NCBI GenBank assembly: GCA_002269645.1 | Contig: NIVC01000131.1 | Location: 62,001 to 126,000 of the forward strand | Length of the DNA stretch: 64,000 bases | From: Macrostomum lignano | Lineage: Eukaryota | Reading direction: 5' to 3' | In this document: one piece after another, positions 1 through 28,800 of the stretch | Position numbering within the stretch: the first letter of the stretch is position 1 | Layout: each line of letters starts with the position of its first letter | Notes under the pieces: generated by a model | What the model was told of the DNA's origin: nothing | Databases searched by the model: none | What the model saw: the letters and a program-made list of their open reading frames with translations, nothing else | Position numbers and translations under genes: made by a program

Positions 1-745
1 TTTGAGAGAGAGGCGCCATTTCATTTAAGATAGGCGCCATTTCATTTGAGAGAGGCGCCATTTCGTTTAAGATAGGCGCCATTTGATTTGAGAGAGGCGC
101 CATTTCATTTAAGAAAGGCGCTATTTCATTTGAGAAAGAGGCGCCATTTTATCTGAGAGAGAGGCGCCATTCAATTTGAGAGAGAGGCGCCATTTCATTT
201 GAGAGAGAGGCGCCTTATCATTTGTGAGAGAGAGGCGCCATATCATTTGAGAGAGAGGCGCCATTTTATTTGAGAGAGAGGCGCTATTTAATTTGAGAGA
301 GAGGTGCCATTTCATTTGAGAGAGAGGCGCCATATCATTTGAGAGAGAGGCGCCATTTCATTTGAGAGAGAGGCGCCATTTTATTTGAGAGAGAGAGGCG
401 CTATTTTTATTTGAGAGAGAGAGGCGCTATTTTTATTTGAGAGAGAGAGGCGCCATTTCATTTGAGAGAGAGGTGCCATTCAATTTGAGAGAGAGAGGCG
501 CCATTTCATTTGAGAGAGAGAGGCGCCATATCATTTGAGAGAGAGGCGCCATTTCATTTGAGAGAGAGAGGCGCCATTTCATTTGAGAGAGAGGCGCCAT
601 ATCATTTGAGAGAGAGGCGCTATTTCATTTGAGAGAGAGGCGCTATTTCATTTGAGAGAGAGGCGCCATATCATTTGAGAGAGAGGCGCTATTTCATTTG
701 ATAGAGAGAGGCGCCATTTCGTTTGAGAGAGAGGCGCCATTTCAT
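1..745. repeat. Minisatellite, ~21-23 bp unit (GA)3-5 GGCGCCATTTCATTT, in the PLA2 intron; runs off the left edge
   Basis: More than 30 tandem variant copies seen directly; the 121..333 ORF is a repeat artefact. Confidence 0.97.
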
Positions 746-879
746 TGTTTGAACCAAGGTGAAATCACTTTCACATTATCATGTTGAGCTTCGAGCATTG
801 CAGTAGATATTAATTTCAGTAGTATCAAAGCGCATAAATATCAAATCTTGGACGAGAACGCTCCCCAGCCCGCACTCAC

Positions 880-1091
880 GCATCCAGATTGTCCACCGGC
901 ACGCCCGCGCCGCCGGGGCCGCAGTAGTTGCCGTAGCCGATGTACGCGGCATAGTGATGGCCGGTGGTGGCGGAGATCATGTGACCCAGCTGGTCGATGC
1001 GCCTGCGCTGCCTGTTGAGCAGCTGGGCGGCATCAACGAATAGCAGCTGAGCCGACAATGCAAGCAGCAGCAAAGCGAATATCAACTTCAT
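880..1091 (-). CDS. Secreted phospholipase A2 (group I/II/V/X-like fold), first coding exon; the rest lies left of the window
   Basis: Signal peptide MKLIFALLLLALSAQLLFVDA, propeptide ending RQRRR, mature start IDQLGHMI (compare NLxQFxxMI), Ca-loop YGNYCGPGGAG, then PVDNLD. Donor GC|GTGAGT at 880/879 falls just before the expected CCxxHD exon. Confidence 0.85.
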
Positions 1092-1934
1092 TCTGCCTCG
1101 ATCCTGGCGTGCTAGCTAGAAATCAAATTAACAAAGGTGCAGCTGGCTTCCCGAAGTATTAAAAGTTTGATTCCGACACGTCCTAGTTGAACATTCCCTA
1201 GCTTTTATATCGATCCGAACTGAGTGCAGTCTGCTGGGAGATTCGCCTTATGGTCCTACAGGCTCAAAAGATAGGTCACGCACCTTAGGTGTTTGCGAAT
1301 TTTTTGCCACTTCTTCGTTGAAATTTTAGTTGTTTCTTTATATTCGACCATGCGGAGAACTGGCCCGGCACTACAGATACGATTGAGAATGCGGTGAATT
1401 AAAATGATTCAGCAAAATTGAAGGCAAATGCTTATTGACCTTTTGCACGAGTGCGAACGTGTATTATATATAGCTACATGTGATTCCTTGAATTAATTTA
1501 CTTGTACGAGTATAAATGTAAGCTAAATAAATGGTATGGGTTGTGCATTTTCAAGGCATTTTGGAGGCGCAAATAGACATTTGCGTATTCATACATGATG
1601 TGTAGAGATTATTTTTGTATTCCCAGCTTCAAATTTTGTGTCACATCTTTAATTTTTTCTGCTGGGGAAAGAGGTTGATTGGAAATTTCCGTCACGCATA
1701 TGTTCATTTGGTCTCTCTGCCTGCTTTCAGGAGTGCAACCGCACTGGCGTGAGCGAATATTTCTCTTTTATTTCTAGCGCTCGTAACATTTAGCTGATGC
1801 TTCAAACAGACAGGCCCTCAAATATTTTTGCAATATTTAAGAAGACTGTTACGTCCTGATACAACGGTAACTTCTAGTGGTCCTTGCCTGGGTGAAGCTG
1901 GACAGATAGGCAGACTTGGCGATCGGTAATTCTT

Positions 1935-2679
1935 CAGAAATTCTTCACCAGGCGGCCATCAGCCGGCAAAGGCGCATTGAAGTCACCGACAACGAAAACA
2001 AGATATCGCGGGATGGAATTAGATCCAGCAGGTGACCAGGGTATCGTAGAGGACCTCAGTCTCTGCGGGATTCTTGCTGGTGCAAGGGGCTATCGGGGCA
2101 TACACGCAGACAACATGCAGGCGCGCCTGTCCTTCAGGGCAAAAGCCGCTTGACCAAGGCGCTTAAGAGGGGAAACCGGCCGGATGTCCAGCAGGGCTTT
2201 GCATTGGAAGCGGCGGGCGAGGGCAGGAAGCCAACACCCCCCGAAGCCAATTCAAGGCCGCCACCGAGGCCCAGGCCTGCGCTTTCGTCCGTGCTCCTGC
2301 AATGCTCTTGGACAGCCAGAACTGAGATGCCCAGCAGTCGGCCGCCAACCGGGTCAGCTCCAGCTGCAGCCTACAGCGGGTGACTGATCAGGGTGCGCGG
2401 GTGTTAAAAGTTGGCGAGCCGAATCTGGGCCAAAAGTGTTGGTTGGTCGGCTCGTCTCTGCGTCTGTTTTGCTTGCGCGTGCATTGCGGCGGGTTGCCGG
2501 TTGGGGTGGAGGTGCTGGCACTCGGGGCTCCGGTGCGGAGCTCCTAGCGCCAAAAATTAAAGCGCTGCCGGCGGCGCGCAGAGTCCAGCTCACTTCGGCG
2601 TCCACTGTGGGTCTCCAGCTCAGTTGCCGCCCCGACAGTCACGAAAGTGACGGCGACACCGTTTTGTCACCTGGCCCAC
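1935..2679 (-). mobile_element. Degraded inverted fragment of the same RTE family (5' region plus AP endonuclease)
   Basis: The reverse complement aligns by eye with 3195-3905 (e.g. GACTTCAATGCGCC..GATGGCCGCCTGGTGAAGAA; GGGCCAGGTG..CGGTGT.GCCG..GCGGCAACT.AGCTGG) with many indels; truncated at the MITE. Confidence 0.85.
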
Positions 2680-2948
2680 GAGAATTGCCAGCAAACAAAT
2701 TTTTCCCGCCGAGATGTGCCCGCCGAGGTTTGCCTACAATGCTTAGAATTCAATTAGGGAGATTTACCCGATCAAAACCTAGTTCGATGGTATAACTGCT
2801 TAAGAATACTAAAGCATTGGGAGGCAACGCAGACAAAATCTGCCGCGTGGCTAAATACGTTGCAGGAAAAAAAGCATTGTGGGCAAAGTTCTGCGGGCAA
2901 TTCACTCGCGGGCAAAACGAACGTGGCAAATCTCGGCGGGCAATTCTC
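2680..2948. mobile_element. MITE-like element, ~270 bp
   Basis: Terminal inverted repeat GAGAATTGCC (2680-2689) / GGCAATTCTC (2939-2948); subterminal CCCGCCGAGAT / ATCTCGGCGGG; no coding capacity; no clear TSD. Confidence 0.6.
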
Positions 2949-3104
2949 ATGTAGGCTTTTTACATTACCAATTCCAGAACCAGAATCGGTTCGGATCTTC
3001 CAATAAAAAAGTAGTATTAATATATTTAATTTTGTTGAATGTTTGACTGCCTTAACAGCCTCACTTGCATAATTTTAGAGACCGTGAAGACGGTAGAGAA
3101 GAGA

Positions 3105-3148
3105 CCATAAAGACGGTCTCTTACTGCGAAGACTCAATTCATTGCATG
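3105..3148 (+). other. Spliced-leader (SL) exon relic at the 5' end of the RTE insertion
   Basis: CCATAAAGACGGTCTCTTACTGCGAAGACTCAATTCATTGCATG differs at 2 of 44 positions from the M. lignano SL as I recall it (not verified). It ends in ATG like flatworm SLs and is not followed by GT. A partial second copy CCGTGAAGACGGT lies at 3082-3094. Confidence 0.75.
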
Positions 3149-3182
3149 TTACTCTGAGCAATTGTAAATTAGAGCCGCCCAC

Positions 3183-3253
3183 CTCCGGCCGTTCCTGCGG
3201 GCCAGGTGCCAACGGTGTTGCCGCCCTCGGGCTGTGCGGCAACTAAGCTGGCG
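3183..3253 (+). ncRNA. Candidate HDV-like ribozyme remnant in the RTE 5' UTR (incomplete)
   Basis: P2-like CTCCGGC/GCTGG(c/a)G, P3-like CCG-TTCCTG-CGG, P4-like TTGCCGC/GCGGCAA, J4/2-like CTAA; no P1 5' partner found. Confidence 0.3.
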
Positions 3254-6200
3254 ACTCACCGACTGCTTCTGAGCGCCGCAAACAGCGCTTCAATGCTCGG
3301 CGCAAGGAGCTTCGTGCTGCTGCCCGCCGCCGCCGCCCCCACCCGGACTCGCAGCCTGCCCAGCCGGAGCCGAGAGGGCCAGACATCCATCCAAGTCTGA
3401 CCCCCCGCACTGCACATGCTCGCGACGAAGAGGTCCCCAGGTGCCAGGCCAACCCATCTGCCTGCCAAGCTGCGGCTGCAGGAGCTAGCTCGCCTGGCCT
3501 CCGACCTGCAGATCTCCATCCTGGCAGTTCAGGAGCACAGCAGGGCCACTGACGAGAGCGCCGATCTGGGCCTCGGATGGCGGTTCAAAGCTGCGCCCGC
3601 CTCGCTCCGTGGAACAGGAGGCATTGGCTTTTTACTCTCGCCAGCAGCACCCAGAGCCCTGCTGAACATCAGCTTCCTGACAAACCGACTCGGCCACGTG
3701 ACTTTCTCCGTAGGCAACCGACGGTTGCACGTCGCCTGCATCTACGCCCCCACTGCCCCCAGGACCAGCGAGGACCCCGCCGAGACTGAAGACCTGTACG
3801 ACAGGCTTGGCCACCTCCTGGACTCAATCCCGGCTCGCGACCTTATATTTGTGGCTGGAGACTTCAATGCGCCCCTGCCCCCTGATGGCCGCCTGGTGAA
3901 GAACAACTGGGGCGTGCCCAACGCCAACTCCGCCCTCCTGGAGACCTTCATCCAGTCTAGGAACCTCGTCGGAGTGAATGGCTCTTTACGGCAGCGGCTC
4001 GCGAAGCTCCGGTGCGGAGCTTCCTGACTTTCTTCGGCCCAAACGGCAGAACGACAAGGCTGGACTGGATCCTCTGCCTTTTCCCAATGCGTTCTAGGGT
4101 GTGCAGAGTGATCAACATCCGCCCCAGATGCGTCGCTTCCGACCACAGCTTGGTTGCCTGAGAACTGAACCTCTCTTGGACGCGATTCAGACGCCCCCCG
4201 CCGAAGCCTCTCTGGGCAGACCTGAGGAACCCAGAGACTCGCACTGCCTTCCTGACCGAGCTCTCCAACGCGAGACCCGCAATCACTGAGACAGCTGAGG
4301 CCTTTGCGAGTGCCGTCGGGTCGGCAGCGTCAGTTCTGCCTAGACAAATAGGACACCAGCCAAGAGCACTTTGGGACTGCGACCCCGTGATCGCCACTGC
4401 CAGACGCTCTGCACAGAGCGCCGCTGCGCGTTACGGCGAAGACAGCGACCAGGCTAGACTTGCCAGAGACAACCTGCAGGTGACGTACGCCCAACGAACT
4501 GAAGTGTTTATTGAGGAGGTGGTCCAAGAAATCAAGACCGCCAACGACAACTGCCGGCACATCGCTGCCTGGCGAGCGATCAACCGCCTCACAGGACCTC
4601 GTCCGACCAAAATCGTTGGCGCTGAGTCCACCGAGCAAAGAAAGAGCCTGCTTGTCGACCACTACCGGCAAGTTTTAAATGCCCCCTCCCCGACGTCTCC
4701 CCTTCTCCCCACCGCCGGCTTCACCCCAGCCCAGCATGGCGACTTCTACACCGGCTCGATCACCGCCGCGAAAGTTACCAAGGCGCTGAAGAGCATGCGC
4801 GCTGACGCTGCCTCTGGAGTCGACCGAGTGCCTCCCAGGGTTCTGAAGTTGCCAGAGCTCACAGACAGCATTACTAGCATCCTGAACAAGTACTGCTGTC
4901 TCGGCGGCGACCCAGCTGCCACGGCCGCTCCCCTCTGGCGTACTTCAAGAATTGTCTCCATCCCGAAGAAGGGCGCCTCCACGAGCCTTGAGAACCAACG
5001 CGGCATCGCACTGGAGTGCACGCTGCCGAAGCTGCTGAACGCAGTGTTGCGCAATCGGCTCCTTCCTGTCCTGAACTCGCTGCCGCTCGAGCTCCAAAGC
5101 GGCTTCAGGCCAGGCAGATCCACCACGGAGCAGATTGTGCCATTCAGTGCATTGTCGAAACCTGCAAGACTCGTCTTCGAGCCGTGTCTATCGTCTTCGT
5201 TGACTTCCGGAAGGCCTTCGACTCTGTCAGCAGGGCGGCTTTAGCCTGGCTCCTGGCTCAGTACGGCGTCCCCGACACCCTGGTGACGGCAGTTATGGAC
5301 CTGTACCACAACTCCAAGGCGTTCGTTGACTCCAGAGATGGCCCAACCGGACGAGTTTGATACCACTTCCGGGGTGCTGCAAGGGGACACGCTATCCCCC
5401 CTGCTTTTTATTCTGGCTGTTGACTACATCCTGCGCCGCTGCCTTCGAGACGACGACAGCTTTGTCCTCGCGCCTCAGCGTAGCTCCCGCCACACTGCCG
5501 TGACGCTCCCAGCCCTCGCCTACGCTGATGACATCGCGCTGCTGTGCCGAGACACTGTAGCAGCTCAGCACGCTCTTACTCGACTCTCCGAGGAAGGCGC
5601 TCGGATCGGCCTGCAGATTAACGCAGGCAAGACGGAGGTGCTGCACGTGGGTGCTGACAATGCCCCACCGCTGACCCTGCCCAACGGCGAGGCCATCTCA
5701 ACGTGCAGCGACTTCCGCTACCTAGGCACCCTCGTGATGAGCCCAGAGGCGATAATCGCGGACAGGAGGACCCAGGCCTGGCGCGCCATGCACCACCTCA
5801 GGCCGATCTTCACCTCCGGAGCGTGGGACGACCTGAAGATCCACCTGTTCCGCGCCTGTAGAGCCGATCCCCTTCTCTACGGCATGGAGGCTGTCCCAAT
5901 GACAACCACGCGCAAACGGGCCCTGGACGCAATGCACCGCAACCTGCTGCTGGGACACTGCCTGCGGCGGTTCGCCCGCGGCGACGACAACCCGCTCAGA
6001 CTGGCCGTTCTGCACCCGCCGACCGAACTGTTCCGTCGCGGCCAAGGGCGGACCCAGACGCTCCGGGACCTGACACCTGTTGCCGACCTGGAGGCAATTG
6101 GACTGACTCCCCAGACTGCTGCGACCTGCCCTGCCCCTCTTTTTCGCAATCGTGTGCGCCCCCCCCCCGACCCTAGCGTCGTTGTAATGTAATGTAATGT

Positions 6201-9200
6201 AATTGCATAATTTTAAACTCTCTTCTAATTCTTCTTGCCATTCAATAACTAGCTCGTATAACTTATAGCAAGAATATCCCTTTAGTTTAGGCGACAAAAA
6301 GTAATACTTTACAAATTTGATCTGGTTCCAGAACAAGAACAAGCAATATGAAAAGGCTCATATGGACCCTGCCTGAGGTCCGGGCTCAGGAGCGACAAAC
6401 CTGGACATCGCTACTGGGCGTGAGAGTTATAGCTAACATGCAATAAATTGAGTCTTCTCAGTAAGAAATTTTTTTAGCTACGGTAGTTTATCTCAAATCA
6501 ATCAATAAGAATAACAAAGGTTGTTTGTTTAGTTTTACTGCTCCACGTAGAACATGCATTTTGAACTAATTTCTTGCATTTTAGTTTGATTACGGACATC
6601 CAGTCAATCATCATCATCTAGTTCAACAATATGAGCATTTACGCGGCTCGTAGTTAGAGTTGGATTGACGGGATTAAAGCTAGTAACAGAATAAGTGATA
6701 AGGACCCTCTTCAATCCTATCCTAGCCAATCCTAGCAAAACTTTGCGAGGCATTACAATTTTTACAAGCTGTGATAAAAAATTCGTGGATAAACTTACTT
6801 AGCTTAAACACCTTGCTTACTTACGTCAAGACAGTAGTTAAGGCCTAAGAAAATTTTTTCGAGCTTAATAGCAAAGTAAAGAAAACTAAAACCTAAAAAC
6901 TAGGGCATAAAGCCCCATTTTAACTGGTTCTTTGATTTGAAACTTGTCAGGATTTTAAAATCATAACATTTTAATCTACTCTACTATACTAGGTATATTT
7001 ACTCTTTTATTCTAGAATCTATTCTAGGTTTTTTATTTATTAAATCTTTTTCAAATGTAATGGAATAGTAGAAATGTTTATTTTCAACTTAACCTTTTAA
7101 ACATTGTGTTTTTCACAGTAACAGTATGAATGGTTTTTATTTTGAATGTAGAGGCCTACATTTTAGGCCCTATCTTTTTTATATTTGCTATGCTATGTTG
7201 AACATTGCCCTATATTGCACACTATAGTCTATATCATCAATCATCTGTATTATATATGGGTAGGCCCCTAGCCAGGATAGAATTTGGTTATCTTCAAGTT
7301 TCGTTCGTTTAATTCCAACACCCACCCCCACCACCCTTGAATAGAGGGCGAAAATAATTCCGGAAATAATTAAACGAACGAAACTTGAAGATTGCCTAGA
7401 ATTCTTGCTTGGGAGTAGGAAAATGCGCGCGCACATTTTTGGAGCAGTGCGCAAGTGCATGCCAGTTGTAAAAATAAGTAATAATGCAGATCATGGCCCA
7501 TGTGCTAAAAAAATGAAATTTCTAGTTTTTCAATTCTATGCCAACATAAATTAAAAAGTTTTACTTTAAGTATAAAAAAGCTTGAGCACTACATGTTTTA
7601 GAGAAAATATTCTTTAAAAATTATAAGAGTTTCACTAAACTCTAAAGTAACTGTTTTTGCTAAAAACTATTATTCTTTGTTTTACTTTTGTTTTGAAATT
7701 TTCTGGCATAAAAACAACCTTTGGGACTATGAAAAGTAGGAGAACTTGAGTACGCATATACCACATGGCATATAACCATGTTGAATGCATGTAAAAGTCA
7801 AATCCTATCTATGATTCTGCAGTAAACAGCTTCTTCCTGCGCAAGCGCATACAATGAAGTGCGCACACACCTTCTTTAAAAGTGCACAAGTAGGCTCTTT
7901 TTCAGTGTGCACAAATTTGACAAGCGTGCATAAACACTTAATAACTTTTATACAAGAATTCGATCCTGGATAGGCAACAAGAGCTTGTAGCACTAGAGGC
8001 ATGTGTCTCCCCCCCTAGATAATGAGTCCATTTAGCATATATAATGCATTGTGCCCCTTGAATTTTTAGTGATATTTTTAGTGCTTTAGTATTTTATTTA
8101 TAATAACTAATGTCTATTATTTTTAGTGCTTTTTTATTTTAGGCTATAAGTAATAATATAATAAACAATAGTCAAGATTATAGATAGGCCTAGCATGCTT
8201 ATACTAGAATAAATCTTATTAAAAAAAGTTTGCTTGCATTGTATATTACAACTTTTTGAAAAAATGCAAAAATTAGTAATTTTCCATTTGAAAAATATCA
8301 ATAAAACTTGTATTTAAATCTGTTTCATAGAAAATGCAATGTTACATTGTGCCACTTTTTGTCTTGCACTATACTGTGGCAAATTTTTCTTCCTTGTTTG
8401 CTGTTGCACCAGAATGCACTAGTGTAGGACATTTCTGACCCCCTTTTGTGCTAGAATTTTATGTGAAAAAAGGCCATTTTCTTGACTATGTAAATATCAA
8501 TGCTCCATGCTTAATGCTCCCCACCCCTAAAATATTAGGCTCTGCTCTCCTAGTGCTATATATATAATGTACCAAGCCAAGATATTGGCCTGAGAAGGGT
8601 TCTATATGCTATCATTTTCTGGCTAAAAGACAAGATCCCAAGTGTAACATTATGGCACCTAGTAAAATATAGAATCCATAGCAGAATTAGAATAGAATAG
8701 CATAGTAAAATGCAAAATCCATTCCAAAAAGATAGGTGTAGCATAAAACTTAGAACAACATCATGCCCTTTTCTTGCAAAAAAAGGCAATTCATAAGTAA
8801 CATTGTATCTCAAAAATGAATTTTTAAGATTTTAAAGATTTTTTCTAAGGTTTTTTCCAAGAAAAAGCCTTGGAAAATGAATTTGAGAAAACATAATACT
8901 TTGCTAAAATGTTCCATAGCCATCTAATTTTAATAGCAAAATAGTTTTTTTGGGGTTCAACAATAGGCCTATTACATTTTTGAGATTTTCAAGTTTTCAA
9001 AAAAGTTGAAATCCATTTTTTCAAGATATTAAGATTCAACATTAAGCTTAATTGGGATCTAATATGCCTATTAACTATTATTATATTAGTTATTTTTTAA
9101 TGTATACAATGACAATAATAAAAGTTTAAACAAAGATTATTTAGTATTGAACTAGTTATTATCATAGTCATAGATATTCATACAGTTATAAACCTTGACT

Positions 9201-13183: not shown

Positions 13184-14110
13184 TTAAAGCACCTGCCTCT
13201 CCTTGGCCATGACTGGCCGGGGCAGAGCGGCCGCCAGCTGGCCATAGCTGGACTTGGCCTTCTCGTACAGCACAAACATGAGGATGTTCCAGCCGGCGAT
13301 GCGGGCGAAGCTCGGTATGAAGCCTTTGTAGAAGCCGCGCAGGCCGCTCTGCTGGTAGAGGCCGCGGGCGACGCTGACGACTCCGGCGCGCTCCTCCGGC
13401 CTGGCGCTCATCAGGCGGGTCTTCACCACGTCGACCGGGGAGGCGACCAGAGTGGCGATGAAGCCACTGCACAGGCCGGCTAGGAAGTGCGTGCCGACAG
13501 CGTTCGGCATGCCCAGGCGGGCCACCAGGTAGGTCTTGATGGTGTCGTAGGACACGACCTCGGCGCAGTTGACGATGGCGTTGCGCGCGACGCTGGGCCC
13601 GGTGCCCTTCCATAGGCCGGCGAGGCCCTCGGTGCGCCAGATGGTTGAATAGGCAGCGGCGCAGCTCGGGTAGCGGCCGGCGGAGCCTTGCATGCGCACC
13701 TTGACCACGTCGGTTGGCTGGGCGGCGCACACGGCCATGGCGCCGGTGGTTATGCCGGCCAGCAGGCGGACGGCCATGAGAGTGGCCGGGCCGGCGCCGG
13801 CGGCGGTGAGGCCCAGCCTGTCCATGTACAGCTGCTTCACCGGCTCGTAGAAGCCGATGCGGATTGAGGCGAAGGCGAACTGGCGCTGCAGGCCGGCGTT
13901 GAGGCCGCCGTACAGGCGGGCGGCGCCCTCGTTCGAGACGATGTTGCGGAAGGTGCCAACGATGGATGAACTGCTGGCTGCGGCAGCGGCGCCGCCGGCG
14001 GCCATCTGCATGCGCACCTTGACCGTGTCCATGGGGAAGGTCAGGGCGTCGGCCACGCAGGCGCAGCTGCCGGCAAGTAGGAGCTTGGTGACTGGGCTGG
14101 GTTCTGCCAT
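13184..14110 (-). CDS. Mitochondrial uncoupling-protein-like carrier (SLC25; UCP2/3-like), 308 aa, intronless
   Basis: Three carrier motifs PMDTVKVR, PTDVVKVR, PVDVVKTR; UCP-like segments LYGGLNAGLQRQFAFASIRIGFYE, ARNAIVNCAEVVSYD, FYKGFIPSFARIAGWN. Confidence 0.92.
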   Translation of the reverse strand: MAEPSPVTKLLLAGSCACVADALTFPMDTVKVRMQMAAGGAAAAASSSSIVGTFRNIVSNEGAARLYGGLNAGLQRQFAFASIRIGFYEPVKQLYMDRLGLTAAGAGPATLMAVRLLAGITTGAMAVCAAQPTDVVKVRMQGSAGRYPSCAAAYSTIWRTEGLAGLWKGTGPSVARNAIVNCAEVVSYDTIKTYLVARLGMPNAVGTHFLAGLCSGFIATLVASPVDVVKTRLMSARPEERAGVVSVARGLYQQSGLRGFYKGFIPSFARIAGWNILMFVLYEKAKSSYGQLAAALPRPVMAKERQVL

Positions 14111-15724: not shown

Positions 15725-16960
15725 CCATTGCCACACCCCCAAATCCCAAAACAAAACCCCATTCCAACACCCAAGCACCAAAACCCCACTCCAACACGCC
15801 AAACGCCCCAAACACGCCAAACACCCAAAACCCCACTCCAACACCCCAAACACCAAAAACCCCACTCCAACACCCCAAACACCAAAACCCCACTCCAACA
15901 CCCCAAACACCAAAACCCCATTCCAACACCCCAAACACCCAAAACCCCATTGCAACACCCCAAACACCAAAACCCCACTCCAGCACGCCAAACACCCCAA
16001 ACCCCATTCCAAAACCCAAACACCAAAACCCCACTCCAACACGCCAAACGCCCCAAACACCCCAAACACCCAAAACCCCACTCCAACACCCCAAACACCA
16101 AAACCCCATTCCAACACCCAAAACCCCATTGCAACACCCCAAACACCAAAACCCCACTCCAGCACGCCAAACGCCCAAACAACCCAAACACCAAAACCCC
16201 ATTCCAACACCCCAAACACCCAAAACCCCATTGCAACACCCCAAACACCAAAACCCCACTCCAGCACGCCAAACACCCCAAACCCCATTCCAACACCCCA
16301 AACACCCAAAACCCCATTGCAACACCCCAAACACCAAAACCCCACTCCAGCACGCCAAACACCCCAAACCCCATTCCAACACCCAAACACCAAAACCCCA
16401 CTCCAGCACGCCAAACGCCCAAACACCCCAAACACCAAAACCCCATTCCAACACCCCAAACACCCAAAACCCCATTCCAACACCCCAAACACCCAAAACC
16501 CCATTGCAACACCCCAAACACCAAAACCCCACTCCAGCACGCCAAACGCCCCAAACACCAAAACTCCATTCCAACACCCCAAACACCCAAAACCCCATTG
16601 CAACACCCCAAACACCAAAACCCCACTCCAGCGCGCCAAACGCCCCAAACACCAAAACCCCATTCCAACACCCCAAACACCCAAAACCCCATTGCAACAC
16701 CCCAAACACCAAAACCCCACTCCAGCACTCCAAACACGCACGACTCCATTCCAAAGCAACAAACACCAAAAACTCCATTACAAAACCCCAAACACCAAAA
16801 ACCCCATTCAAAACCCCCCATTAAAAAACCGCAAACACCAAAAACCCCATTCAAAACCCCCCATTAAAAAACCGCAAACACCAAAAACTTCATTGCAACA
16901 CCCAAAACAATTAACATTCCAACACCCAAAACCTCATACCATCCCAACACCCCCCAACAA
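15725..16960. repeat. Complex C/A-rich low-complexity tandem repeat (CCCCAAACACCAAAACCCCACTCCAACA-type modules)
   Basis: Shuffled short modules; almost no stops in any frame, giving multiple artefactual ORFs. Confidence 0.95.
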
Positions 16961-17589: not shown

Positions 17590-17830
17590 GGCCATCAATT
17601 GGGATTTATGAGGGTGGCATCCGTTGGGATCTATTAGGGTGGCATCAGTTGGGATCTATGAGGGTGGCATCAGTTGGGATCTATGAGGGTGGCATCAGTT
17701 GGGATCTATGAGGGTGGCATCAGTTGGGATCTAGGAGGGTGGCATCAGTTGGGATCTAGGAGGGTGGCATCAGTTGGGATCTAGGAGGGTGGCATCAGTT
17801 GGGAATCTGGGAAGGCGGCGTACATGCAAG
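17590..17830. repeat. Minisatellite, 25-bp unit GAGGGTGGCATCAGTTGGGATCTAT, ~9 copies
   Basis: Seen directly. Confidence 0.95.
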
Positions 17831-18409: not shown

Positions 18410-18800
18410 GACTATGTCCAGCTGGTCTTGGAGGGTAAAGACACAATGTCCGGCTGGTCTTAGAGGGTAAAAGGCACAATGTCCGGCTGGTCTTGGAGGG
18501 TAAAGGCACAATGTCCGGCTGGTCTTGGAGGGTAAAGGCACAATATCCGGCTGGTCTTGGAGGGTAAAGGCACAATATCCGGCTGGTCTTGGAGGGTAAA
18601 GGCACAATGTCCGGCTGGTCTTGGAGGGTAAAGGCACAATGTCCGGCTGGTCTTGGAGGGTAAAGGCACAATATCCGGCTGGTCTTGGAGGGTAAAGGCA
18701 CAATGTCCGGCTGGTCTTGGAGGGTAAAGGCACAATGTCCGGTTGGTCTCTGAGGGTAAAGGCACAATTCCCGGATGGTCTTGGAGGGCAAAGACAATGT
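18410..18800. repeat. Minisatellite, 32-bp unit GTCCGGCTGGTCTTGGAGGGTAAAGGCACAAT, ~12 copies
   Basis: Seen directly. Confidence 0.96.
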
Positions 18801-19179
18801 CTAAACATCATTAAAAAAGTGACACTGTTGTAATAAATGAAACATATTTCATAAATCAGTCAGGTATAAAAATCGTAGGTGATTAATAGCAGTTTATAAA
18901 TCAGGCATTTTATTAATCACACATGGATTACGTGGCAATCAGTGTTCTCAAACTGAAAAGAAACAAATGATACAAAACACAATGGCAGTGATTTTATAGA
19001 AAGCAAAAAACAATACAGCTGACAGCTGAAAGAATCCAATAATAAATGCTACTAAAAGAAACACAAGCAAAAAACACTCTTTAGCTAAAAAAGCAGAAAA
19101 ACAGACTTGTGGAATAAAAAAATTGAAGCAGATTGACTCAATGATCGAATGCATTAAACAAGCTCGTACAGTCATGCAG

Positions 19180-22100
19180 TTAAAAACAGCCGCCTTCGGG
19201 ATGCTGGGCACACAGGGCAGACGTCACCAAGTTGAGGCAGAGCTGCAGTCGGTTGCGCAGCTCGGGCGGCGGCGGTTCACCAGCGCCCGCGGCGTCGGAG
19301 TTGAAGGCGAAGACGCGCACGGGGGAGCTGCTCCCGTTGGGCGGCATCAGAGTGACGGACTCGGTGCTGGGACAGAGCACCAGCTTCACGTGGTCCCGGA
19401 AGTTCACCTTGACGTGGCCAAACAGGTAGTTGGGTAACTGGCATTAGCTGAGCTACTAATGAAATTTTAGCTGACCTTGTATTGTACCGAGTGGGATACA
19501 GAGTGGCGCCGCATTGAGCTGGCTGGGATACAGAGTGGCGCCGCATTGAGCTGGCTGGGATACAGAGTGGCGCCTCATTGAACTGGCTGGGATACAGAGT
19601 GGCGCCTCATTGAACTGGCTGGGATACAGAGTGGCGTCTCATTGAACTGGCTGGGATACAGAGTGGCGCCTCATTAAACTGGCTGGGATACAGAGTGGCG
19701 CCTCATTGAGCTGGCTGGGATACAGAGTGGCGCCTCATTGAGCTGGCTGGGATACAGAGTGGCGCCTCATTTAACTGGCTGGGATACAGAGTGGCGCCTC
19801 ATTGAACTGGCTGGGATACAGAGTGGCGCCTCATTGAACTGGCTGGGATACAGAGTGGCGTCTCATTGAACTGGCTGGGATACAGAGTGGCGCCTCATTG
19901 AACTGGCTGGGATACAGAGTGGCGCCTCATTAAACTGGCTGGGATACAGAGTGGCGTCTCATTGAACTGGCTGGGATACAGAGTGGCGTCTCATTGAACT
20001 GGCTGGGATACAGAGTGGCGCCTCATTAAACTGGCTGGGATACAGAGTGGCGCCTCATTGAGCTGGCTGGGATACAGAGTGGCGCCTCATTGAGCTGGCT
20101 GGGATACAGAGTGGCGCCTCATTAAACTGGCTGGGATACAGAGTGGCGCCTCATTGAACTGGCTGGGATACAGAGTGGCGCCTCATTTAACTGGCTGGGA
20201 TACAGAGTGGCGCCTCATTGAACTGGCTGGGATACAGAGTGGCGCCTCATTGAACTGGCTGGGATACAGAGTGGCGCCTCATTGAACTGGCTGGGATACA
20301 GAGTGGCGTCTCATTGAACTGGCTGGGATACAGAGTGGCGTCTCATTGAACTGGCTGGGATACAGAGTGGCGCCTCATTGAACTGGCTGGGATACAGAGT
20401 GGCGCCTCATTGAACTGGCTGGGATACAGAGGGCGCCTCATTGAACTGGCTGGGATACAGAGGGCGCCTCATTGAACTGGCTGGGATACAGAGTGGCGCC
20501 TCATTAAACTGGCTGGGATACAGAGTGGCGCCTCATTGAACTGGCTGGGATACAGAGTGGCGTCTCATTGAACTGGCTGGGATACAGAGTGGCGCCTCAT
20601 TGAACTGGCTGGGATACAGAGTGGCGTCTCATTGAACTGGCTGGGATACAGAGTGGCGCCTCATTGAACTGGCTGGGATACAGAGTGGCGCCTCATTAAA
20701 CTGGCTGGGATACAGAGTGGCGTCTCATTGAACTGGCTGGGATACAGAGTGGCGTCTCATTGAACTGGCTGGGATACAGAGTGGCGTCTCATTGAACTGG
20801 CTGGGATACAGAGTGGCGCCTCATTGAACTGGCTGGGATACAGAGTGGCGCCTCATTAAACTGGCTGGGATACAGAGTGGCGCCTCATTGAACTGGCTGG
20901 GATACAGAGTGGCGTCTCATTGAACTGGCTGGGATACAGAGTGGCGCCTCATTGAGCTGGCTGGGATACAGAGGGCGCCTCATTGAACTGGCTGGGATAC
21001 AGAGTGGCGCCTCATTGAACTGGCTGGGATACAGAGTGGCACGCACAAGGACACAGGCTTATAAATACGAATCTCCCTTTCTCTCTCTCTCTCTCTCTCT
21101 CTCACCTGCACGAGCCCATTAGACAGTGCAAACACGGTGCCTCCACTATTGGCCTCGGGCCGGTGGCTCCAGTGCGTGACTGCTGGCACCCGGGCTGCCG
21201 GTGGCGGCCCACCGACATCGGCTCGGCCGCCAGCCAGGCCCAGGTTGAGGCGCATGTACGCGGCCAGCTGGTCCAGCAGGCAGACCCGGCCGGCCAGTTC
21301 AGCGCAGTCGGCTGACAGAAGCCGCTCCCGACCGTCGGCATCGTAGAACTGCACGCAGCCTGGCGCGGACTGGGCCCGAACTAGGCTGCTGGCATCGTTA
21401 AATCTGGCGCCTACGGAGCCGTCGCTGAGCTCGTAGGCGAAGCCGTAGCCCTGCGGCAGGCAGTCCATCCAGCGGGCTACCCAAAGAGGCGCCGCCAGAT
21501 CCGGAGCTTCCGTAGGCGTCGAGGCCAGAGCGACTCGAAGCAGGTCGGCAGCCGCCGCCCGAGCCTCGGCAGCTGACTGTGGCGCCACCAGATAGCGACT
21601 GTGATCGCCGGGCGCTAGCGGCGGTCGCTCGCAGATGACGGAAGCGGCGCCTTCTCGATCAACGGCGACACCGCCATCAACTCCGGCAGCGTCGACAGCA
21701 GCATCAACATCAGCTGTCTGTACTTTTGGAATCGAAACGGAAATTTTATCAGCAGGCGGCTGTTGCTTAGCTCGGTTAGCATTGCTATTAGTATTATTGC
21801 TGTTGTTGTTAACGTTGCCAGTCTGCAGGCAGCCTAATGGCTTCCTTGGGCATTTGAGCTGAGGCGCCTGACGCGGCGGCGGCATCGGTGGAGGCATCGG
21901 TGGAGGCATCAGCCGGTCGAGCCGGGGCTGCTGGCTGAGACAGGACTCCGGCAGGGTGAGCAGCTGCGGCTCCAATCGGAAGAACTGATCCCGCAGTACC
22001 TCGGCCATGCCGGGCCGCTGCTCGGGATTCTGGCACAGCAGCCGGCCAAGAAACGCCCGCGTCACCGGGCACAGGGCCGCAGGCGGGCGCCATGGCGAGT

Positions 22101-23309
22101 CGCGGATGCTGCGCAGAGTGGCTTCCATTGTAGCTGCTCGAACTGGCGGCCGGCCAGTCAGCAGGGTGACCAGCACGCAGCCGAGGCTCCAGACGTCGGC
22201 GCCGAAGCCATGTCCGGCGGCGGTCCTGTCCAGCACCTCTGGCGCCATGTACTGCACAGTGCCGCAGCGGGTGCGCCGCCTGCTAGCGTCAGCGGCGCGA
22301 CTGAGCCGAGCGGCCAAGCCAAAATCGGTGAGCTTGGCCACCATGCCTTTGGCTAGCAGGATATTGTCCAGTTTGATGTCGCGGTGAATCTGGTCGAATA
22401 CAATTGTAATATAGTACTTTGATATGTGTCATTATAATACACGAGTGCATAACACTTTATATTGCCTCCATTTTTCACCTCGCCACTGTCAATTCTGCAA
22501 TTAATTTACAAATCCATCTACAACTTTGGGCTTATGAAATTAAAGCAAAACAATATGAAAAGGAACCTTTCCCTACACAAGTATATAAAATACAACAAAT
22601 TAATAACATGCTGTGCATGCTAAATCAAAAAAGGAATAGTAAATCTTCGCTGCCCCAGATCAAATGCAATAATTGATTTTGTGATGAAAAAATGATTAGT
22701 TTTTCTAGGAAATTGGCCTCCAAAAAATAACACGATCTTTGAGTTCTACGTCCTATTATACTATAGTGGTCCTTGGCTCAAAGACACCGAAATGGCACAA
22801 AGAAAACAACACCAACTCACCACGCCATTCTCGTGCAGGTAGCAGCAGGCCTCGGCAACCCGACGGCACAGGTGCTGCGCCTCCGGCAGAGTGAGCACCC
22901 GCCTACGCCGCAGCATAGCAGCCAGAGAGTGGTGCTGGCACAGCTCCAGCACCAGATAGTGCCGAGCAGAGTCGGACTGGTGCCAAAGCAGCCGGACAAT
23001 GTTCGGGTGCTTCAGGCTGGAGTGAATCTCCAGCTCGTGACGCAGTCGATCAGCCAGGTAGGGCGTCCGGATGCTGGCCTTCGTGATCACCTTCACGGCC
23101 ACCTCGCTGCTGCCGCCGTCTTCGAAGGCAAATTTGTGGCAGGTGGCGAAGCCGCCCCGACCGAGCAGTTGCTGCCAAATCAGATGACGGCCGCTGGCCG
23201 GGTGCACCAGCTGCTTGGGACAGATTTCTGCGGGCCCGCTGGCCGCTGGGGCCGCCGCTTCATCCGGCGCTACCTGACGGCGCTTTGATTTGGTGTCACC
23301 TGCCGGCCG
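19180..23309 (-). CDS. Polo-like kinase (PLK1-like, divergent), ~670 aa
   Basis: Exons 23309-22821, 22389-21106, 19407-19180, all phase 0; possible 12-nt first exon 23915-23904. Kinase motifs GRGGFATC, VAVK, HRDIKLDN, DFG, RRRTRCGTVQYMAPE; linker RKPL (D-box-like); polo boxes LWVARWMDC..GYGFAYELSDGSVGARFND and VQ|VNFRDHVKLVLCP. Confidence 0.92.
19490..21040. repeat. Minisatellite, 32-bp unit GATACAGAGTGGCGCCTCATTGAACTGGCTGG, ~47 copies, filling the last PLK intron
   Basis: Period 32 measured (19561 to 19593). Confidence 0.98.
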
Positions 23310-25865: not shown

Positions 25866-28800
25866 CTACTTGAACAGCCTGGCCAACTGTTGCAGCTGGC
25901 GGCTCATATCGCTAACATCGCTGCTATTAGCCAGAGTCCGGTGGAAGTGCTGGATCTGGTCTGGCGTCGCCTGCACCAGTCCGTCCGGCCGGGTGGCCGG
26001 CAGCTGCAGCAAAGCGGCTCCAATCCAGTCGGACACTGTCCGCTGATCCAATAGCAACAGGCTGTGCAAAACCTCGGCAGCGTCCGGCACAGAGTAGCTA
26101 CTCAGCTGCAGTACGCTGGCGTGCACAAGCACCCGAGTGAGCGCGGCGCCGCCCTGCTCGGAGTCCGATAGCAGAGCCAGCACCGGTTCCCTGTGCTGCT
26201 GATTGTGCTGGCCAAGCTGCAGCAGTTCCTGCAGAAATTTTGTCACCGAGGCAACGGCGTCGCGATGCTCGGCGGACAGACTGCCCAGAGCCAGCTGCCA
26301 GATTGTTGGCAGAGCGCGCGACGCCAATAATTGGCCCGGACAGCGCTGCAAGAATCTTGTGCACAGCCGGAACAGATCCTCGGCCATGTCGGGATTCTGG
26401 GCCAGGCCGCGGCCGCTCTCCAGCGTTGCCAGTGTTGGCCCCATCATGGCTTCGAGCAGCTGCAGCAGGCCCACCTGGCAGGTTGAGTCTTCGCCAAATT
26501 CGTCAGTTAGAATGCCGGCCAGGTACAGGAAGCAGGAGTGGGGACAGGCGGCGTAGCTGAGCATGATGCGGTCGGCCAGCTGGGGCAGGAGGGGTGCACA
26601 CGACCGCTTGAGGCAGCGGACCTGCAGGGGTAGGGAATGTTTTAGGTTTAACATTCAGTAGGTTCACATCCTGGAGTTGGGAGCTTTGGGGTTGGTCAGC
26701 TGGAGTTGGGAGCTTTGGGGTGGGTCGGCTGGAGTTTGGGAGCTTTGGGTGGGTCAGCCGGGGTTTGGGAGCTTTGGGTGGGTTAGCTGGAGTTTGGGAG
26801 CTTTGGGGTGGGTCAGCCGGGGTTTGGGAGCTTTGGGGTGGGTCAGCCGGGGTTTGGGAGCTTTGGGTGGGTCAGCTGGAGTTTGGGAGCTTTGGGGTGG
26901 GTCAGCTGGAGTTTGGGAGCTTTGGGGTGGGTCAGCTGGAGTTTGGGACTTTTGGGTGGGTCAGCTGGAGTTTGGGAGCTTTGGGTGGGTCAGCTGGAGT
27001 TTGGGAGCTTTGGGGTGGGTCAGCTGGAGTTTGGGAGCTTTGGGGTGGGTCAGCCGGGGTTTGGGAGCTTTGGGTGGGTCAGCTGGAGCTTGGGAGCTTT
27101 GGGGTGGGTCAGCCGTGGTTTGGGAGCTTTGGGGTGGGTCAGCCGGGGTTTGGGAGCTTTGGGTGGGTCAGCTGGAGTTTGGCAGCTTTGGGGTGGGTCA
27201 GCCGGGGTTTTCTGAGCCTTGGGGAGGGTCAGCCGAGGTTTGGGAGCTTTGGGGGTCAGCATGGGTTTGGGAGCCTTGAAATGCATTTTGGAATTTAGTG
27301 CTATGTATTAGTAATCAGAAGTCAAAAGAACCGTAGTAAGACAGTAAGCCATTTAAAACAATACCCTCGCCGAAGCTTACCTGGTACCGGATGACCCGGC
27401 AGGTGTGCTCCACAACTCGCATGCAGTCGGGATACTGAGCCAGAGTGCGCTCAATCGACGGCCAGACGGCCCGCATGACGGGCAGGCCGGGATGCGACTC
27501 CGACGAGCTGCTCAAATTGGGATGAAATTCCCTAAATAGCGTGGCCAGACAGTCCAGCCAGGGTATGGGATTGGCTTTGCCTGCGTTTGGACCGCAACAA
27601 CTGCCGCCGCTGCAGCCGCTGCGACTGCCAGCTGCGGTGCGGGCTGCCAACGCAGCTTCGAGGCCGGCCACCTGCACGTCGCATAGGCGCTGCAGGCCTG
27701 CCGTGATCTGCTGCTCGTCTGGCAGCCGGCTCAGCACCTGTGTGATGCCGCACAGCAGCTCCTGTGGGCCGGGGTGGGGAATGGAATTTGCTTAGTGGGT
27801 AGACGATAGACTGAGCATCTGGGAGCGGCTCAGCCTGAGGGTTTGGGAGGCTGGCCAAGAAACTGAGGGTCTGGGAGGCTGGCCCAATAACTGAGGATCT
27901 GGGAGGCTGGCACAGAAACTGAGGGTCTGGGAGGCTGGCCAAGAAACTGAGGATCTGGAAGGCTGGCCAAGAAACTGAGGGTCTGGGAGGCTGGCCAAGA
28001 AACTGAGGATCTGGAAGGCTGGCCAAGAAACTGAGGATCTGGAAGGCTGGCCTAATAACTGAGGATCTGGGAGGCTGGCCCAGAAACTGGGGATCTGAGA
28101 GGCTGGCCCAATAACTGAGGATCTGAGAGGCTGGCCAAGAAACTGAGGGTCTGGGAGGCTGGCCAAGAAACTGAGGATCTGGAAGGCTGGCCAAGAAACT
28201 GAGGATCTGGAAGGCTGGCCTAATAACTGAGGATCTGGGAGGCTGGCCCAGAAACTGAGGATCTGGAAGGCTGGCCTAAAAACTGAGGATCTGGGAGGCT
28301 GGCCAAGAAACTGAGGATCTGGGAGGCTGGCCAAGAAACTGAGGGTCTGGGAGGCTGGCCAAGAAACTGAGGGTCTGGGAGGCTGGCCAAGAAACTGAGG
28401 ATCTGGAAGGCTGGCCTAATAACTGAGGATCTGGGAGGCTGGCCCAGAAACTGGGGATCTGAGAGGCTGGCCCAATAACTGAGGATCTGAGAGGCTGGCC
28501 CAGCATTAGGATGACGGCATAAACCAGTCTCACCTGTGCCGCATCCGGCTTGAGGCCGGAATTGTTAGGCAGAGTCTCGGCCACCTGCAGCAAGCCAGCA
28601 AACTGGCTCTGCATCTGGGTTTTGCAGAATGTGCAATACTGGCCAAGGGCCGAGGCTGACGCGCTGACCAGCTCTGGATTGCTCAGAGCGTTCAGCAGCA
28701 CGGGGAACACGGCGCCAAGGAACTCCTGATGGATGTTGACCCACACGGCCATCTTGCCTAGGAAGGTGAGTCCGGTCAGCTGAAGAGGAATCGGCGTGCT

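What the first reader, a model, noticed from the sequence alone, without database searches (positions are those of the whole stretch)
3065..6215. LINE insertion capped by a spliced-leader sequence: apparent retrotransposition of an SL-trans-spliced RTE RNA
Seen in sequence: a 13-bp TSD (3065-3077 / 6203-6215) brackets the whole insert. Inside it, before any RTE sequence, is a 44-nt segment ending in ATG (3105-3148) that is followed by TT, not by a GT donor. A partial duplicate of its 5' end lies at 3082-3094. From memory: the segment matches the M. lignano SL (CCGTAAAGACGGTCTCTTACTGCGAAGACTCAATTTATTGCATG) at 42/44, and flatworm SL exons end in AUG. Inference: the template was a processed, SL-trans-spliced RNA rather than an SL gene. 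The RTE may therefore use host trans-splicing to obtain a capped 5' end, either directly or via read-through from a trans-spliced host locus; the ~25 nt between SL and element would then be transduced flank. The double SL start fits template jumping at the cap. This differs from SLACS/CRE/NeSL elements, which insert into SL genes. The SL ATG here reads M-L-L-stop, so it does not initiate the ORF.
Basis: partly seen in the sequence, partly recalled or inferred. Interest (0 to 1): 0.85.

Follow-up and report, generated by a model that had tools for sequence, protein, structure and literature searches.

The report
Flatworm LINE copy capped by spliced leader
A dead jumping gene (an RTE-type LINE) in a Macrostomum flatworm genome starts with the host's trans-spliced leader, so it was copied from a leader-capped RNA; this is a clear example of something already noted in passing in other flatworms.

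Summary
An exact 13-bp target-site duplication (3065-3077 / 6203-6215) brackets a 3.1-kb RTE-like LINE. It has endonuclease and reverse-transcriptase domains, a broken ORF, and a (GTAAT)n tail. Its 5' end carries 44 nt matching 42/44 the published Macrostomum spliced leader (SL). The copy stops exactly at the SL exon's last base (…TTGCATG) and is followed by TTACT. A genuine SL RNA gene recovered here from a metagenome contig has a GTAAG donor, an Sm-like site and two more hairpins at that point. Five SL-capped mRNAs from a metatranscriptome-like JGI assembly show the same exon end.

The best explanation is target-primed reverse transcription of an SL-trans-spliced RTE-containing RNA, copied to its very 5' end. 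It leaves 27 extra nt built from the SL's own 5' hairpin.

A second, 5'-truncated SL copy lies 220 bp away on the opposite strand (6437-6466). It also lacks a donor, and it sits upstream of and co-oriented with a second RTE fragment.

I could not test whether the family routinely relies on trans-splicing, because no close copies are reachable. The idea is not new. SL-tagged LINE/LTR loci were reported in parasitic flatworms in 2025 and SL-capped TE transcripts in Hydra. This is a new member of a known kind, of moderate interest.

The parts
3065..3077 (.). Left copy of the 13-bp target-site duplication, TTGCATAATTTTA
   Evidence: exact, only two occurrences in 64 kb, directly abutting the insert.
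3078..3104 (+). 27 extra nt at the 5' junction, GAGACCGTGAAGACGGTAGAGAAGAGA. It holds a direct 12/13 copy of SL nt 2-14 (3082-3094). Its last six bases, AAGAGA, extend the SL 5' hairpin into a 10-bp palindrome (AAGAGACCAT / ACGGTCTCTT).
   Evidence: the fold shows both hairpins. It is not the SL-gene upstream flank, which reads CTCTTT in L008. The origin by reverse-transcriptase snap-back or template switching is inferred.
3105..3148 (+). DNA copy of the spliced-leader exon (nt 2-45 of 45), 42/44, ending in ATG
   Evidence: Mismatches at 3107 and 3140.
3149..3199 (+). 51 nt between the SL and the conserved RTE 5' UTR. The first 26 nt are AT-rich (TTACTCTGAGCAATTGTAAATTAGAG). Whether this is element sequence or transduced flank is unresolved. 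The SL ATG opens a 3-codon uORF here.
   Evidence: Similarity to relative L001 starts only at about 3200. There is no significant similarity to the region upstream of RTE#2 (p=0.27).
3200..3415 (+). RTE 5' UTR conserved with RTE#2 (window minus strand) and with relatives L001 and L012
3416..6192 (+). Single RTE-type ORF (APE endonuclease then reverse transcriptase), inactivated. Defects: a frameshift at about 4009-4015, an in-frame TGA at 4159, and a frame excursion at about 5140-5340 with in-frame TAG 5242 and TGA 5284. The stop codon TAA at 6190 lies inside the tail repeat.
6184..6202 (+). (GTAAT)n 3' tail with essentially no 3' UTR
6203..6215 (.). Right copy of the 13-bp target-site duplication
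6437..6466 (-). Second SL copy (SL#2), outside the TSD. It covers SL nt 16-45 at 29/30 (mismatch at 6458), is 5'-truncated, and is followed by TTAGCT rather than a GT donor.
1881..2700 (-). RTE#2: the 5' UTR plus endonuclease part of a second, diverged RTE (about 66% nt identity to RTE#1). It is 3'-truncated and co-oriented with SL#2, whose exon ends about 620 nt upstream of RTE#2's conserved 5' UTR once RTE#1 is removed.
   Evidence: The link to SL#2 is not proven.
2677..2951 (.). Direct and inverted copies of a 22-nt motif (GGCAAAnnTCnGCGGGCAATTC) just upstream of the RTE#2 5' UTR
   Evidence: three matches to the pattern (up to 3 mismatches) where 0.03 are expected, all in this stretch; one search shows further, more degenerate inverted copies there.

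Best explanation
The insert is a full-length, now dead, RTE-type LINE copy made by target-primed reverse transcription of an RNA whose 5' end was the host spliced leader.

Proposed sequence of events:
1. A source RTE was transcribed, probably as part of a longer host-driven transcript.
2. The spliceosome joined the SL exon to a 3' splice site about 50 nt upstream of the conserved RTE 5' UTR.
3. The RTE reverse transcriptase primed at a nick in an AT-rich target and copied the RNA through the SL to its 5' terminus.
4. It stuttered at the SL's terminal hairpin, adding 27 nt of SL-derived sequence.
5. Integration was completed with a 13-bp TSD.
6. The copy then decayed by frameshifts, stop codons and two SL substitutions.

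Shown: the SL identity, the exon-exact junction, the absence of SL-gene features, the position of the SL inside the TSD, and the LINE domains and tail.

Inferred: the trans-splicing event itself, read-through as the source of transcription, and the mechanism of the 27-nt addition.

My split within this explanation (shares of it, not absolute probabilities):
- about 55%: opportunistic trans-splicing of a read-through transcript, with a short 5' transduction;
- about 20%: an acceptor inside the element's own 5' UTR;
- the remainder: the SL was acquired one or more generations earlier (listed separately as a rival).
For: - SL identity: 42/44 and 34/35 to published Macrostomum SLs, with 0.00 matches expected by chance.
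- Exon-exact junction: five mRNA contigs (VDAC, IDH, CNBP-like, GAPDH, arginine-kinase-like) carry the SL ending in …TTGCATG followed by unrelated sequence. The window copies end the same way (CATG|TTACTC and CATG|TTAGCT).
- Not an SL gene: the real SL RNA gene (L008) has GTAAGA, an Sm-like site and a three-hairpin fold (z = -3.57). Window 3105-3215 has no such fold (z = 0.02).
- Exact 13-bp TSD enclosing SL plus element.
- APE and RT domains, a single ORF whose stop lies in the (GTAAT)n tail.
- The extra 27 nt consist of SL-hairpin sequence only, as expected if the RNA ended at the SL 5' terminus.
- A second independent SL/non-donor junction sits upstream of a second RTE.
- TEs crowd M. lignano operon spacers (PMC8629364). 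Authors working on parasitic flatworms gave the same interpretation (PMC12582326).
Against: - There is no RNA evidence, and no other copy of this family or the source locus could be examined. The closest relatives reachable are 59-76% identical in protein and lack the SL.
- The acceptor site (outron) is lost by definition.
- The 51 nt after the SL cannot be assigned to element or host.
- RTE#2 has no SL at the equivalent position, so a conserved family junction is not supported.
- The insertion boundaries rest on one assembly.
Confidence: 0.8

Rival explanations
1. The SL was inherited in DNA. It was captured once by an ancestral master copy and has since been an ordinary part of this subfamily's 5' UTR. 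It is transcribed from an internal or upstream promoter, so this particular insertion involved no trans-splicing.
For: Once integrated, an SL is copied like any 5' UTR sequence. Many LINEs start transcription at their first base. No family copies could be examined.
Against: The SL is only 2/44 diverged in a copy whose ORF carries several inactivating lesions. RTE#2 and the relatives L001 and L012 share the 5' UTR but show no SL at that place. SL#2 has a different junction. The extra 5' nucleotides are purely SL-derived, which fits an RNA that ended at the SL cap. At least one trans-splicing event in the lineage is still required.
Confidence: 0.15
2. Template-switch chimera. The reverse transcriptase jumped from the 5' end of an ordinary RTE RNA onto free SL RNA, as in U6 snRNA/L1 chimeric insertions.
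For: SL RNA is an abundant small nuclear RNA. LINE reverse transcriptases do template-switch (PMC11838501 abstract). The junction region shows signs of stuttering.
Against: A jump onto SL RNA would start at its 3' end or at a random internal point and would include the intron half (about 65 nt). Here, in two independent copies, the SL ends exactly at the exon's last base, and no intron-half sequence is present. By my estimate this has roughly a 1-in-10,000 chance for two events on a 109-nt RNA.
Confidence: 0.03
3. Insertion into, or next to, an SL RNA gene or pseudogene, as for the SL-gene-specific SLACS/CRE/NeSL-like elements.
For: SL-gene-specific LINEs exist in trypanosomes and nematodes (background knowledge).
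Against: The SL lies inside the TSD and not in the flank. There is no GT donor, Sm site or downstream hairpins. The target TTGCATAATTTTA and its flanks are unrelated to the SL gene. The endonuclease is APE-type, not restriction-like.
Confidence: 0.01
4. Assembly or library artefact: a chimera between a cDNA-like molecule and genomic sequence.
For: Only one assembly is available to me, and Macrostomum genomes are repeat-rich and duplicated (PMC10468722).
Against: The exact TSD, the ORF lesions in this copy and the continuity of AT-rich host sequence on both sides are what a real old insertion looks like.
Confidence: 0.02

Closest known systems
SL-tagged LINE/LTR loci in parasitic flatworm genomes (Mol Biol Evol 2025, PMC12582326)
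   Same: Genomic partial SL sequences without other SL-RNA features, attached to retrotransposons. The authors interpreted them as integrated copies of SL-trans-spliced retrotransposon transcripts.
   Different: That report mentioned 597 loci only as discarded false SL genes, with no anatomy. The case here is in a free-living macrostomid. It is a near-full-length SL with TSD, tail, junction and 5' extra nucleotides resolved.
SL-relict retrogenes of dinoflagellates (Slamovits and Keeling 2008; PMC5585692, PMC12014239)
   Same: DNA copies of trans-spliced RNAs recognisable by the SL at their 5' end.
   Different: Those are host genes, often re-spliced to give tandem 5'-truncated relicts downstream of a new SL. 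Here the cargo is the LINE itself, and the extra partial SL is a 5' fragment lying upstream.
SL trans-splicing of TE transcripts (Hydra Iso-Seq, PMC12220107; C. elegans Cer1 SL1 mRNA, PMC3315495)
   Same: TE RNAs receive the host SL.
   Different: Those are RNA-level observations. Here the evidence is the DNA record of such an RNA having completed retrotransposition.
SL-gene-specific LINEs (SLACS, CRE1/2, CZAR, NeSL-1)
   Same: A LINE physically joined to SL sequence.
   Different: Those elements insert into SL genes at a fixed site using a restriction-like endonuclease, and the SL is target DNA. Here the SL is inside the TSD, the endonuclease is APE-type, and the target is an ordinary AT-rich site.
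U6 snRNA/L1 chimeric insertions
   Same: A small nuclear RNA sequence fused 5' of a LINE within one TSD.
   Different: In U6/L1 chimeras the U6 is joined at its own 3' end by template switching (background knowledge; the chimeras themselves are noted in the PMC11838501 abstract). Here only the SL exon is present, cut at the splice donor.
Ribozyme-processed LINE 5' ends (R2 and L1Tc HDV-like ribozymes; PMC3185411)
   Same: A possible functional analogy: freeing a LINE RNA from a host co-transcript.
   Different: In those elements processing is by self-cleavage (PMC3185411). Here it would be by host trans-splicing, which also supplies a cap. This role is hypothetical.

Membership tests
SL RNA gene | SL exon sequence | tested here: met
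   42/44 and 34/35 to published SLs.
SL RNA gene | GT splice donor immediately after the exon | tested here: not met
   The window has CATG|TTACTC and CATG|TTAGCT. The real gene L008 and PMC8629364 have GTAAG.
SL RNA gene | Sm-binding site and three-hairpin fold | tested here: not met
   L008 folds canonically (z = -3.57) with ATTTTTAG. Window 3105-3215 gives z = 0.02 and has no Sm-like site.
RTE-clade LINE | N-terminal APE-type endonuclease followed by reverse transcriptase in one ORF | tested here: met
   Exo_endo_phos and RVT_1. Homologues align colinearly across the frameshifts.
RTE-clade LINE | About 3.2 kb long, very short 3' UTR ending in a short tandem repeat, no poly(A) | tested here: met
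   The unit inside the TSD is 3.1 kb. The stop codon lies inside the (GTAAT)n tail.
RTE-clade LINE | Phylogenetic placement of the RT within the RTE clade | not tested
   No named RTE reference sequences were among the hits. The assignment rests on architecture.
SL-gene-specific LINEs (SLACS/CRE/NeSL) | Insertion at a fixed position within SL gene repeats | tested here: not met
   The target is TTGCATAATTTTA in AT-rich intergenic DNA, and the SL is inside the TSD.
SL-gene-specific LINEs (SLACS/CRE/NeSL) | Restriction-like endonuclease | tested here: not met
   An APE-type Exo_endo_phos domain was found instead.
snRNA/LINE template-switch chimera (U6/L1 type) | The snRNA is joined through its own 3' end, so the whole snRNA (here including the SL intron half) is present | tested here: not met
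   Only the exon is present, ending at the donor position in both copies.
Retrocopy of an SL-trans-spliced RNA | SL exon only, junction at the exon's last base, followed by unrelated sequence | tested here: met
Retrocopy of an SL-trans-spliced RNA | Hallmarks of target-primed reverse transcription (TSD, 3' tail) enclosing the SL | tested here: met
Retrocopy of an SL-trans-spliced RNA | SL-RTE transcripts exist, or a source locus has AG before TTACTCTGAGC | not testable with these tools
   The species' genome and RNA-seq are not in the reachable collections.

The most novel reading that the evidence does not exclude
RTE-clade LINEs of Macrostomum have no promoter of their own. They routinely depend on host read-through transcription plus SL trans-splicing to release a capped, translatable RNA that can retrotranspose. 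This would be a spliceosomal counterpart of the HDV-like ribozymes of R2 and L1Tc. SL tags left in DNA, such as the two in this window, would then be a genome-wide record of the acceptor sites used.
Probability: 0.2. Interest if true: 0.7.

Novelty: new member of a known kind. Interest (0 to 1): 0.45.

Why it matters
An SL at the 5' end of a TSD-bounded LINE shows that a trans-spliced RNA can serve as a retrotransposition template in a flatworm, and that the reverse transcriptase can read through to the end of the hairpinned SL (capping is inferred from the general properties of SL RNAs). SL tags therefore mark exactly where the RNA began. Across a whole genome they could show how apparently promoter-less RTE elements get expressed (read-through plus trans-splicing, or an internal acceptor) and how much 5' flank they transduce. 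For annotation, such copies are a source of false SL RNA genes and of genes wrongly called SL-bearing. PMC8629364 reports one such mis-assignment in M. lignano.

Tried and rejected
- Rfam scan of the window at gathering thresholds: no hits.
- Other copies of the family: BLAST of the insert against the window found only the diverged RTE#2 fragment and SL#2.
- Two protein searches (endonuclease ORF, RT ORF) gave nothing closer than 59-76% identity, so the species' genome is not in the collection.
- Contigs of six relatives (L001, L002, L003, L010, L011, L012) contain no Macrostomum SL. L001 is cut just where 5' UTR conservation begins.
- A MAFFT alignment seemed to place a degenerate SL upstream of RTE#2. 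A local-alignment test showed this is spurious (score 11 against a null mean of 13.3).
- A TSD for the SL#2 unit: none of 9 nt or more.
- Homology of 3149-3199 to the region upstream of RTE#2: not significant (p = 0.27).
- A GTAATGTAA 9-mer at 2960-2968 (-) could be an RTE-type tail ending a short SL#2 unit. A similar 9-mer sits in an AT-rich intron at 37578, so chance cannot be excluded.
- The 12-mer SL match at 26483-26494 lies in a transportin-like coding ORF and is taken as chance.
- A dinoflagellate-style re-splicing origin for the doubled SL start was rejected. The partial copy is a 5' fragment lying upstream, not a 5'-truncated relict downstream.

Full report
**1. What is in the sequence**

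The 13-mer TTGCATAATTTTA occurs exactly twice in the 64-kb window, at 3065-3077 and 6203-6215, even when one mismatch is allowed. The two copies directly abut a 3,125-bp GC-rich insert (about 63% GC) sitting in AT-rich DNA.

The insert encodes an Exo_endo_phos (APE-type) endonuclease and an RVT_1 reverse transcriptase. Homologous proteins align colinearly from about 3470 to 6170. The reading frame is broken in several places:
- a frameshift near 4009-4015;
- an in-frame TGA at 4159;
- a frame excursion between about 5140 and 5340, with in-frame TAG 5242 and TGA 5284.

The ORF's stop codon (TAA, 6190) lies inside the terminal (GTAAT)n repeat, 6184-6202. So there is almost no 3' UTR and no poly(A). 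This is the architecture of an RTE-type LINE. I did not place the RT phylogenetically.

**2. The leader**

Positions 3105-3148 read CCATAAAGACGGTCTCTTACTGCGAAGACTCAATTCATTGCATG. The published 35-nt M. lignano SL is CGGTCTCTTACTGCGAAGACTCAATTTATTGCATG (PMC8629364). The 45-nt SL assembled for M. cliftonense is GCCGTAAAGACGGTCTCTTACTGCGAAGACTCAATTTATTGCATG; the 43-nt M. hystrix SL is identical over its length (PMC10468722, suppl. Table S3).

The window copy matches these at 34/35 and 42/44. The differences are at 3107 (a CpG to CpA change) and 3140. The SL is shared across the genus, so it does not identify the species. A 29-mer of the SL is expected 0.00 times in shuffled sequence.

**3. Not an SL gene**

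I scanned the JGI metagenome collection with a 21-mer from the SL's 3' part. It returned six contigs.

Five come from one metatranscriptome-like assembly. They carry the SL at their extreme 5' end, joined to ordinary mRNAs: VDAC, isocitrate dehydrogenase, a CNBP-like zinc-finger protein, GAPDH and an arginine-kinase-like protein. In every one the SL ends at …TTGCATG and unrelated sequence follows.

The sixth contig (L008) is a genuine SL RNA gene:
- the SL exon is followed by GTAAGA, as described for M. lignano (GTAAG, PMC8629364);
- it has a hairpin, an Sm-like ATTTTTAG and a third hairpin;
- it folds into the canonical three-hairpin shape, z = -3.57.

The window copy ends at the same exon base but continues TTACTCTGAGC. 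It has no donor, no Sm site and no fold (z = 0.02). The SL ATG opens only a 3-codon uORF (M-L-L-stop). Because the SL lies inside the TSD, it belonged to the molecule that was reverse-transcribed.

**4. The 5' junction**

Between the TSD and the SL lie 27 nt (3078-3104): GAGACCGTGAAGACGGTAGAGAAGAGA.
- Positions 3082-3094 are a direct 12/13 copy of SL nt 2-14.
- The last six bases, AAGAGA, are the reverse complement of SL nt 15-20. They extend the SL's own 5' hairpin (CCGT-AAAG-ACGG) into a 10-bp palindrome.
- The real gene's upstream flank is CTCTTT, so these bases are not gene flank.

They consist only of SL-hairpin-derived sequence. This is what one expects if the RNA ended at the SL 5' terminus and the reverse transcriptase snapped back or switched template there. 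The exact path cannot be reconstructed and is inference.

**5. Between the SL and the element**

The 5' UTR shared with RTE#2 and with relatives L001 and L012 begins at about 3200 (GGGCCAGGTG…). The 51 nt at 3149-3199 are not significantly similar to anything available. Their first 26 nt are AT-rich like the host intergenic DNA, with an abrupt shift at about 3175. That fits a short 5' transduction from a source locus but does not prove it.

**6. A second SL**

On the minus strand at 6437-6466 there is a second SL copy: nt 16-45 at 29/30, 5'-truncated as LINE products often are. It is again followed by non-donor sequence (CATG|TTAGCT). It lies outside the RTE#1 TSD, so it comes from an independent event.

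With RTE#1 removed, the end of this SL lies about 620 nt upstream of, and in the same orientation as, the conserved 5' UTR of a second RTE fragment (RTE#2, 1881-2700, minus strand). RTE#2 is about 66% identical to RTE#1 and is 3'-truncated.

I could not decide between two readings:
- SL#2 heads RTE#2 with a long leader;
- SL#2 heads a separate short retrocopy that ends near a GTAATGTAA 9-mer at 2960-2968.

No TSD of 9 nt or more was found, and a similar 9-mer occurs by apparent chance at 37578.

RTE#2 has no SL directly before its conserved 5' UTR. Instead it has direct and inverted copies of a 22-nt motif at 2677-2951. Within this window the SL junction is therefore not a conserved family feature.

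**7. Explanation**

The best reading (confidence 0.8) is that RTE#1 is a retrocopy of an SL-trans-spliced RNA containing a full-length RTE.

- The template-switch alternative (a U6/L1-like chimera with free SL RNA) is disfavoured. Both SL copies stop exactly at the splice donor and none of the intron half is present.
- The SL-gene-target alternative fails on every defining feature.
- An inherited SL, captured in an earlier generation, cannot be excluded (0.15). It would still need one trans-splicing event in the lineage.

Whether trans-splicing is a regular part of the family's life cycle is untested. The closest relatives I could reach are 59-76% identical in protein and come from other organisms.

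In M. lignano, repeats and transposable elements account for much of the spacing between genes in operons (PMC8629364). That makes read-through transcription plus opportunistic trans-splicing plausible.

**8. Comparison with what is known**

- A 2025 survey of parasitic flatworms discarded 597 SL-like loci that sat in LTR and LINE elements and carried only partial leaders. The authors suggested these are integrated retrotransposon transcripts that had received the SL (PMC12582326).
- In Hydra about 30% of TE Iso-Seq reads carry an SL (PMC12220107).
- C. elegans Cer1 has an SL1-spliced mRNA (PMC3315495).
- Dinoflagellate retrogenes are recognised by SL relicts.

The kind is therefore known. What is new is a well-resolved example in a free-living macrostomid, with a near-complete SL, TSD, tail and 5' stutter, plus a second tag nearby.

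It also explains a published mis-assignment. The SL RNA first reported for M. lignano mapped to the 5' end of a trans-spliced protein-coding gene (PMC8629364).

**9. Verdict**

Novelty: new member of a known kind. Interest: 0.45. The most novel reading still open is that these RTEs systematically depend on SL trans-splicing to free and cap their RNA. I give that a probability of about 0.2.

Noticed in passing
window 6437-6466 (minus strand): A second genomic SL copy (29/30, 5'-truncated at SL nt 16) followed by TTAGCT instead of a GT donor. It lies 220 bp beyond the RTE#1 TSD on the opposite strand, so it marks another retrocopy of a trans-spliced RNA. The 3' end of its unit is unresolved.
   Followed up: partly
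window 1881-2951 (minus strand): A second, diverged and 3'-truncated RTE fragment (5' UTR plus endonuclease). It is preceded by a roughly 275-bp stretch of direct and inverted copies of the 22-nt motif GGCAAAnnTCnGCGGGCAATTC, found nowhere else in the window. This could be a 5' inversion or a repeated 5' UTR module.
   Followed up: partly
L008 615-725 (JGI contig Ga0302322_100095745): A complete Macrostomum-type SL RNA gene (exon, GTAAGA donor, Sm-like ATTTTTAG, three hairpins) in an environmental metagenome contig. GCCGTAAA is partly duplicated 15 nt upstream of the exon start. Five contigs of Ga0316592 (L004-L007, L009) are SL-capped mRNAs of a macrostomid-like animal.
   Followed up: partly
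window 1-746: About 32 copies of a 23-bp tandem repeat (TTTGAGAGAGAGGCGCCATTTCA) running off the window start.
   Followed up: no
window about 878-1090 (minus strand): First exon of a secreted phospholipase A2-like gene: a hydrophobic N-terminus that looks like a signal peptide (read by eye), YGNYCGPGG, then a GT donor. Pfam Phospholip_A2_1 E = 6.8e-7, just below the gathering score.
   Followed up: partly
window 13184-14110 (minus strand): An uninterrupted 308-aa ORF with three Mito_carr repeats: an apparently intronless mitochondrial carrier gene. It could itself be a retrogene, although no SL lies upstream.
   Followed up: no
window 15752-16941, 17593-17804, 18414-18801: A strongly strand-asymmetric C/A-rich satellite (29/57/367-bp periods) that produces long spurious ORFs in all six frames, followed by 25-bp and 32-bp tandem arrays.
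   Followed up: no
window 20980-22344, 25866-26654, 52458-53111, 62743-63978 (all minus strand): Host coding exons: a polo-like kinase (Pkinase plus POLO box), a transportin-3/importin-13 repeat and a PDZ domain. There is also a DUF4218-containing ORF (below Pfam's gathering score) that may be transposase-related. RTE#1 is antisense to the PLA2-like and mitochondrial-carrier genes that flank it on the minus strand.
   Followed up: no
L002 1-75: The ENA contig that carries a related endonuclease ORF begins with Illumina adapter sequence (CAAGCAGAAGACGGCATACGAGAT…). This looks like an assembly contaminant.
   Followed up: no
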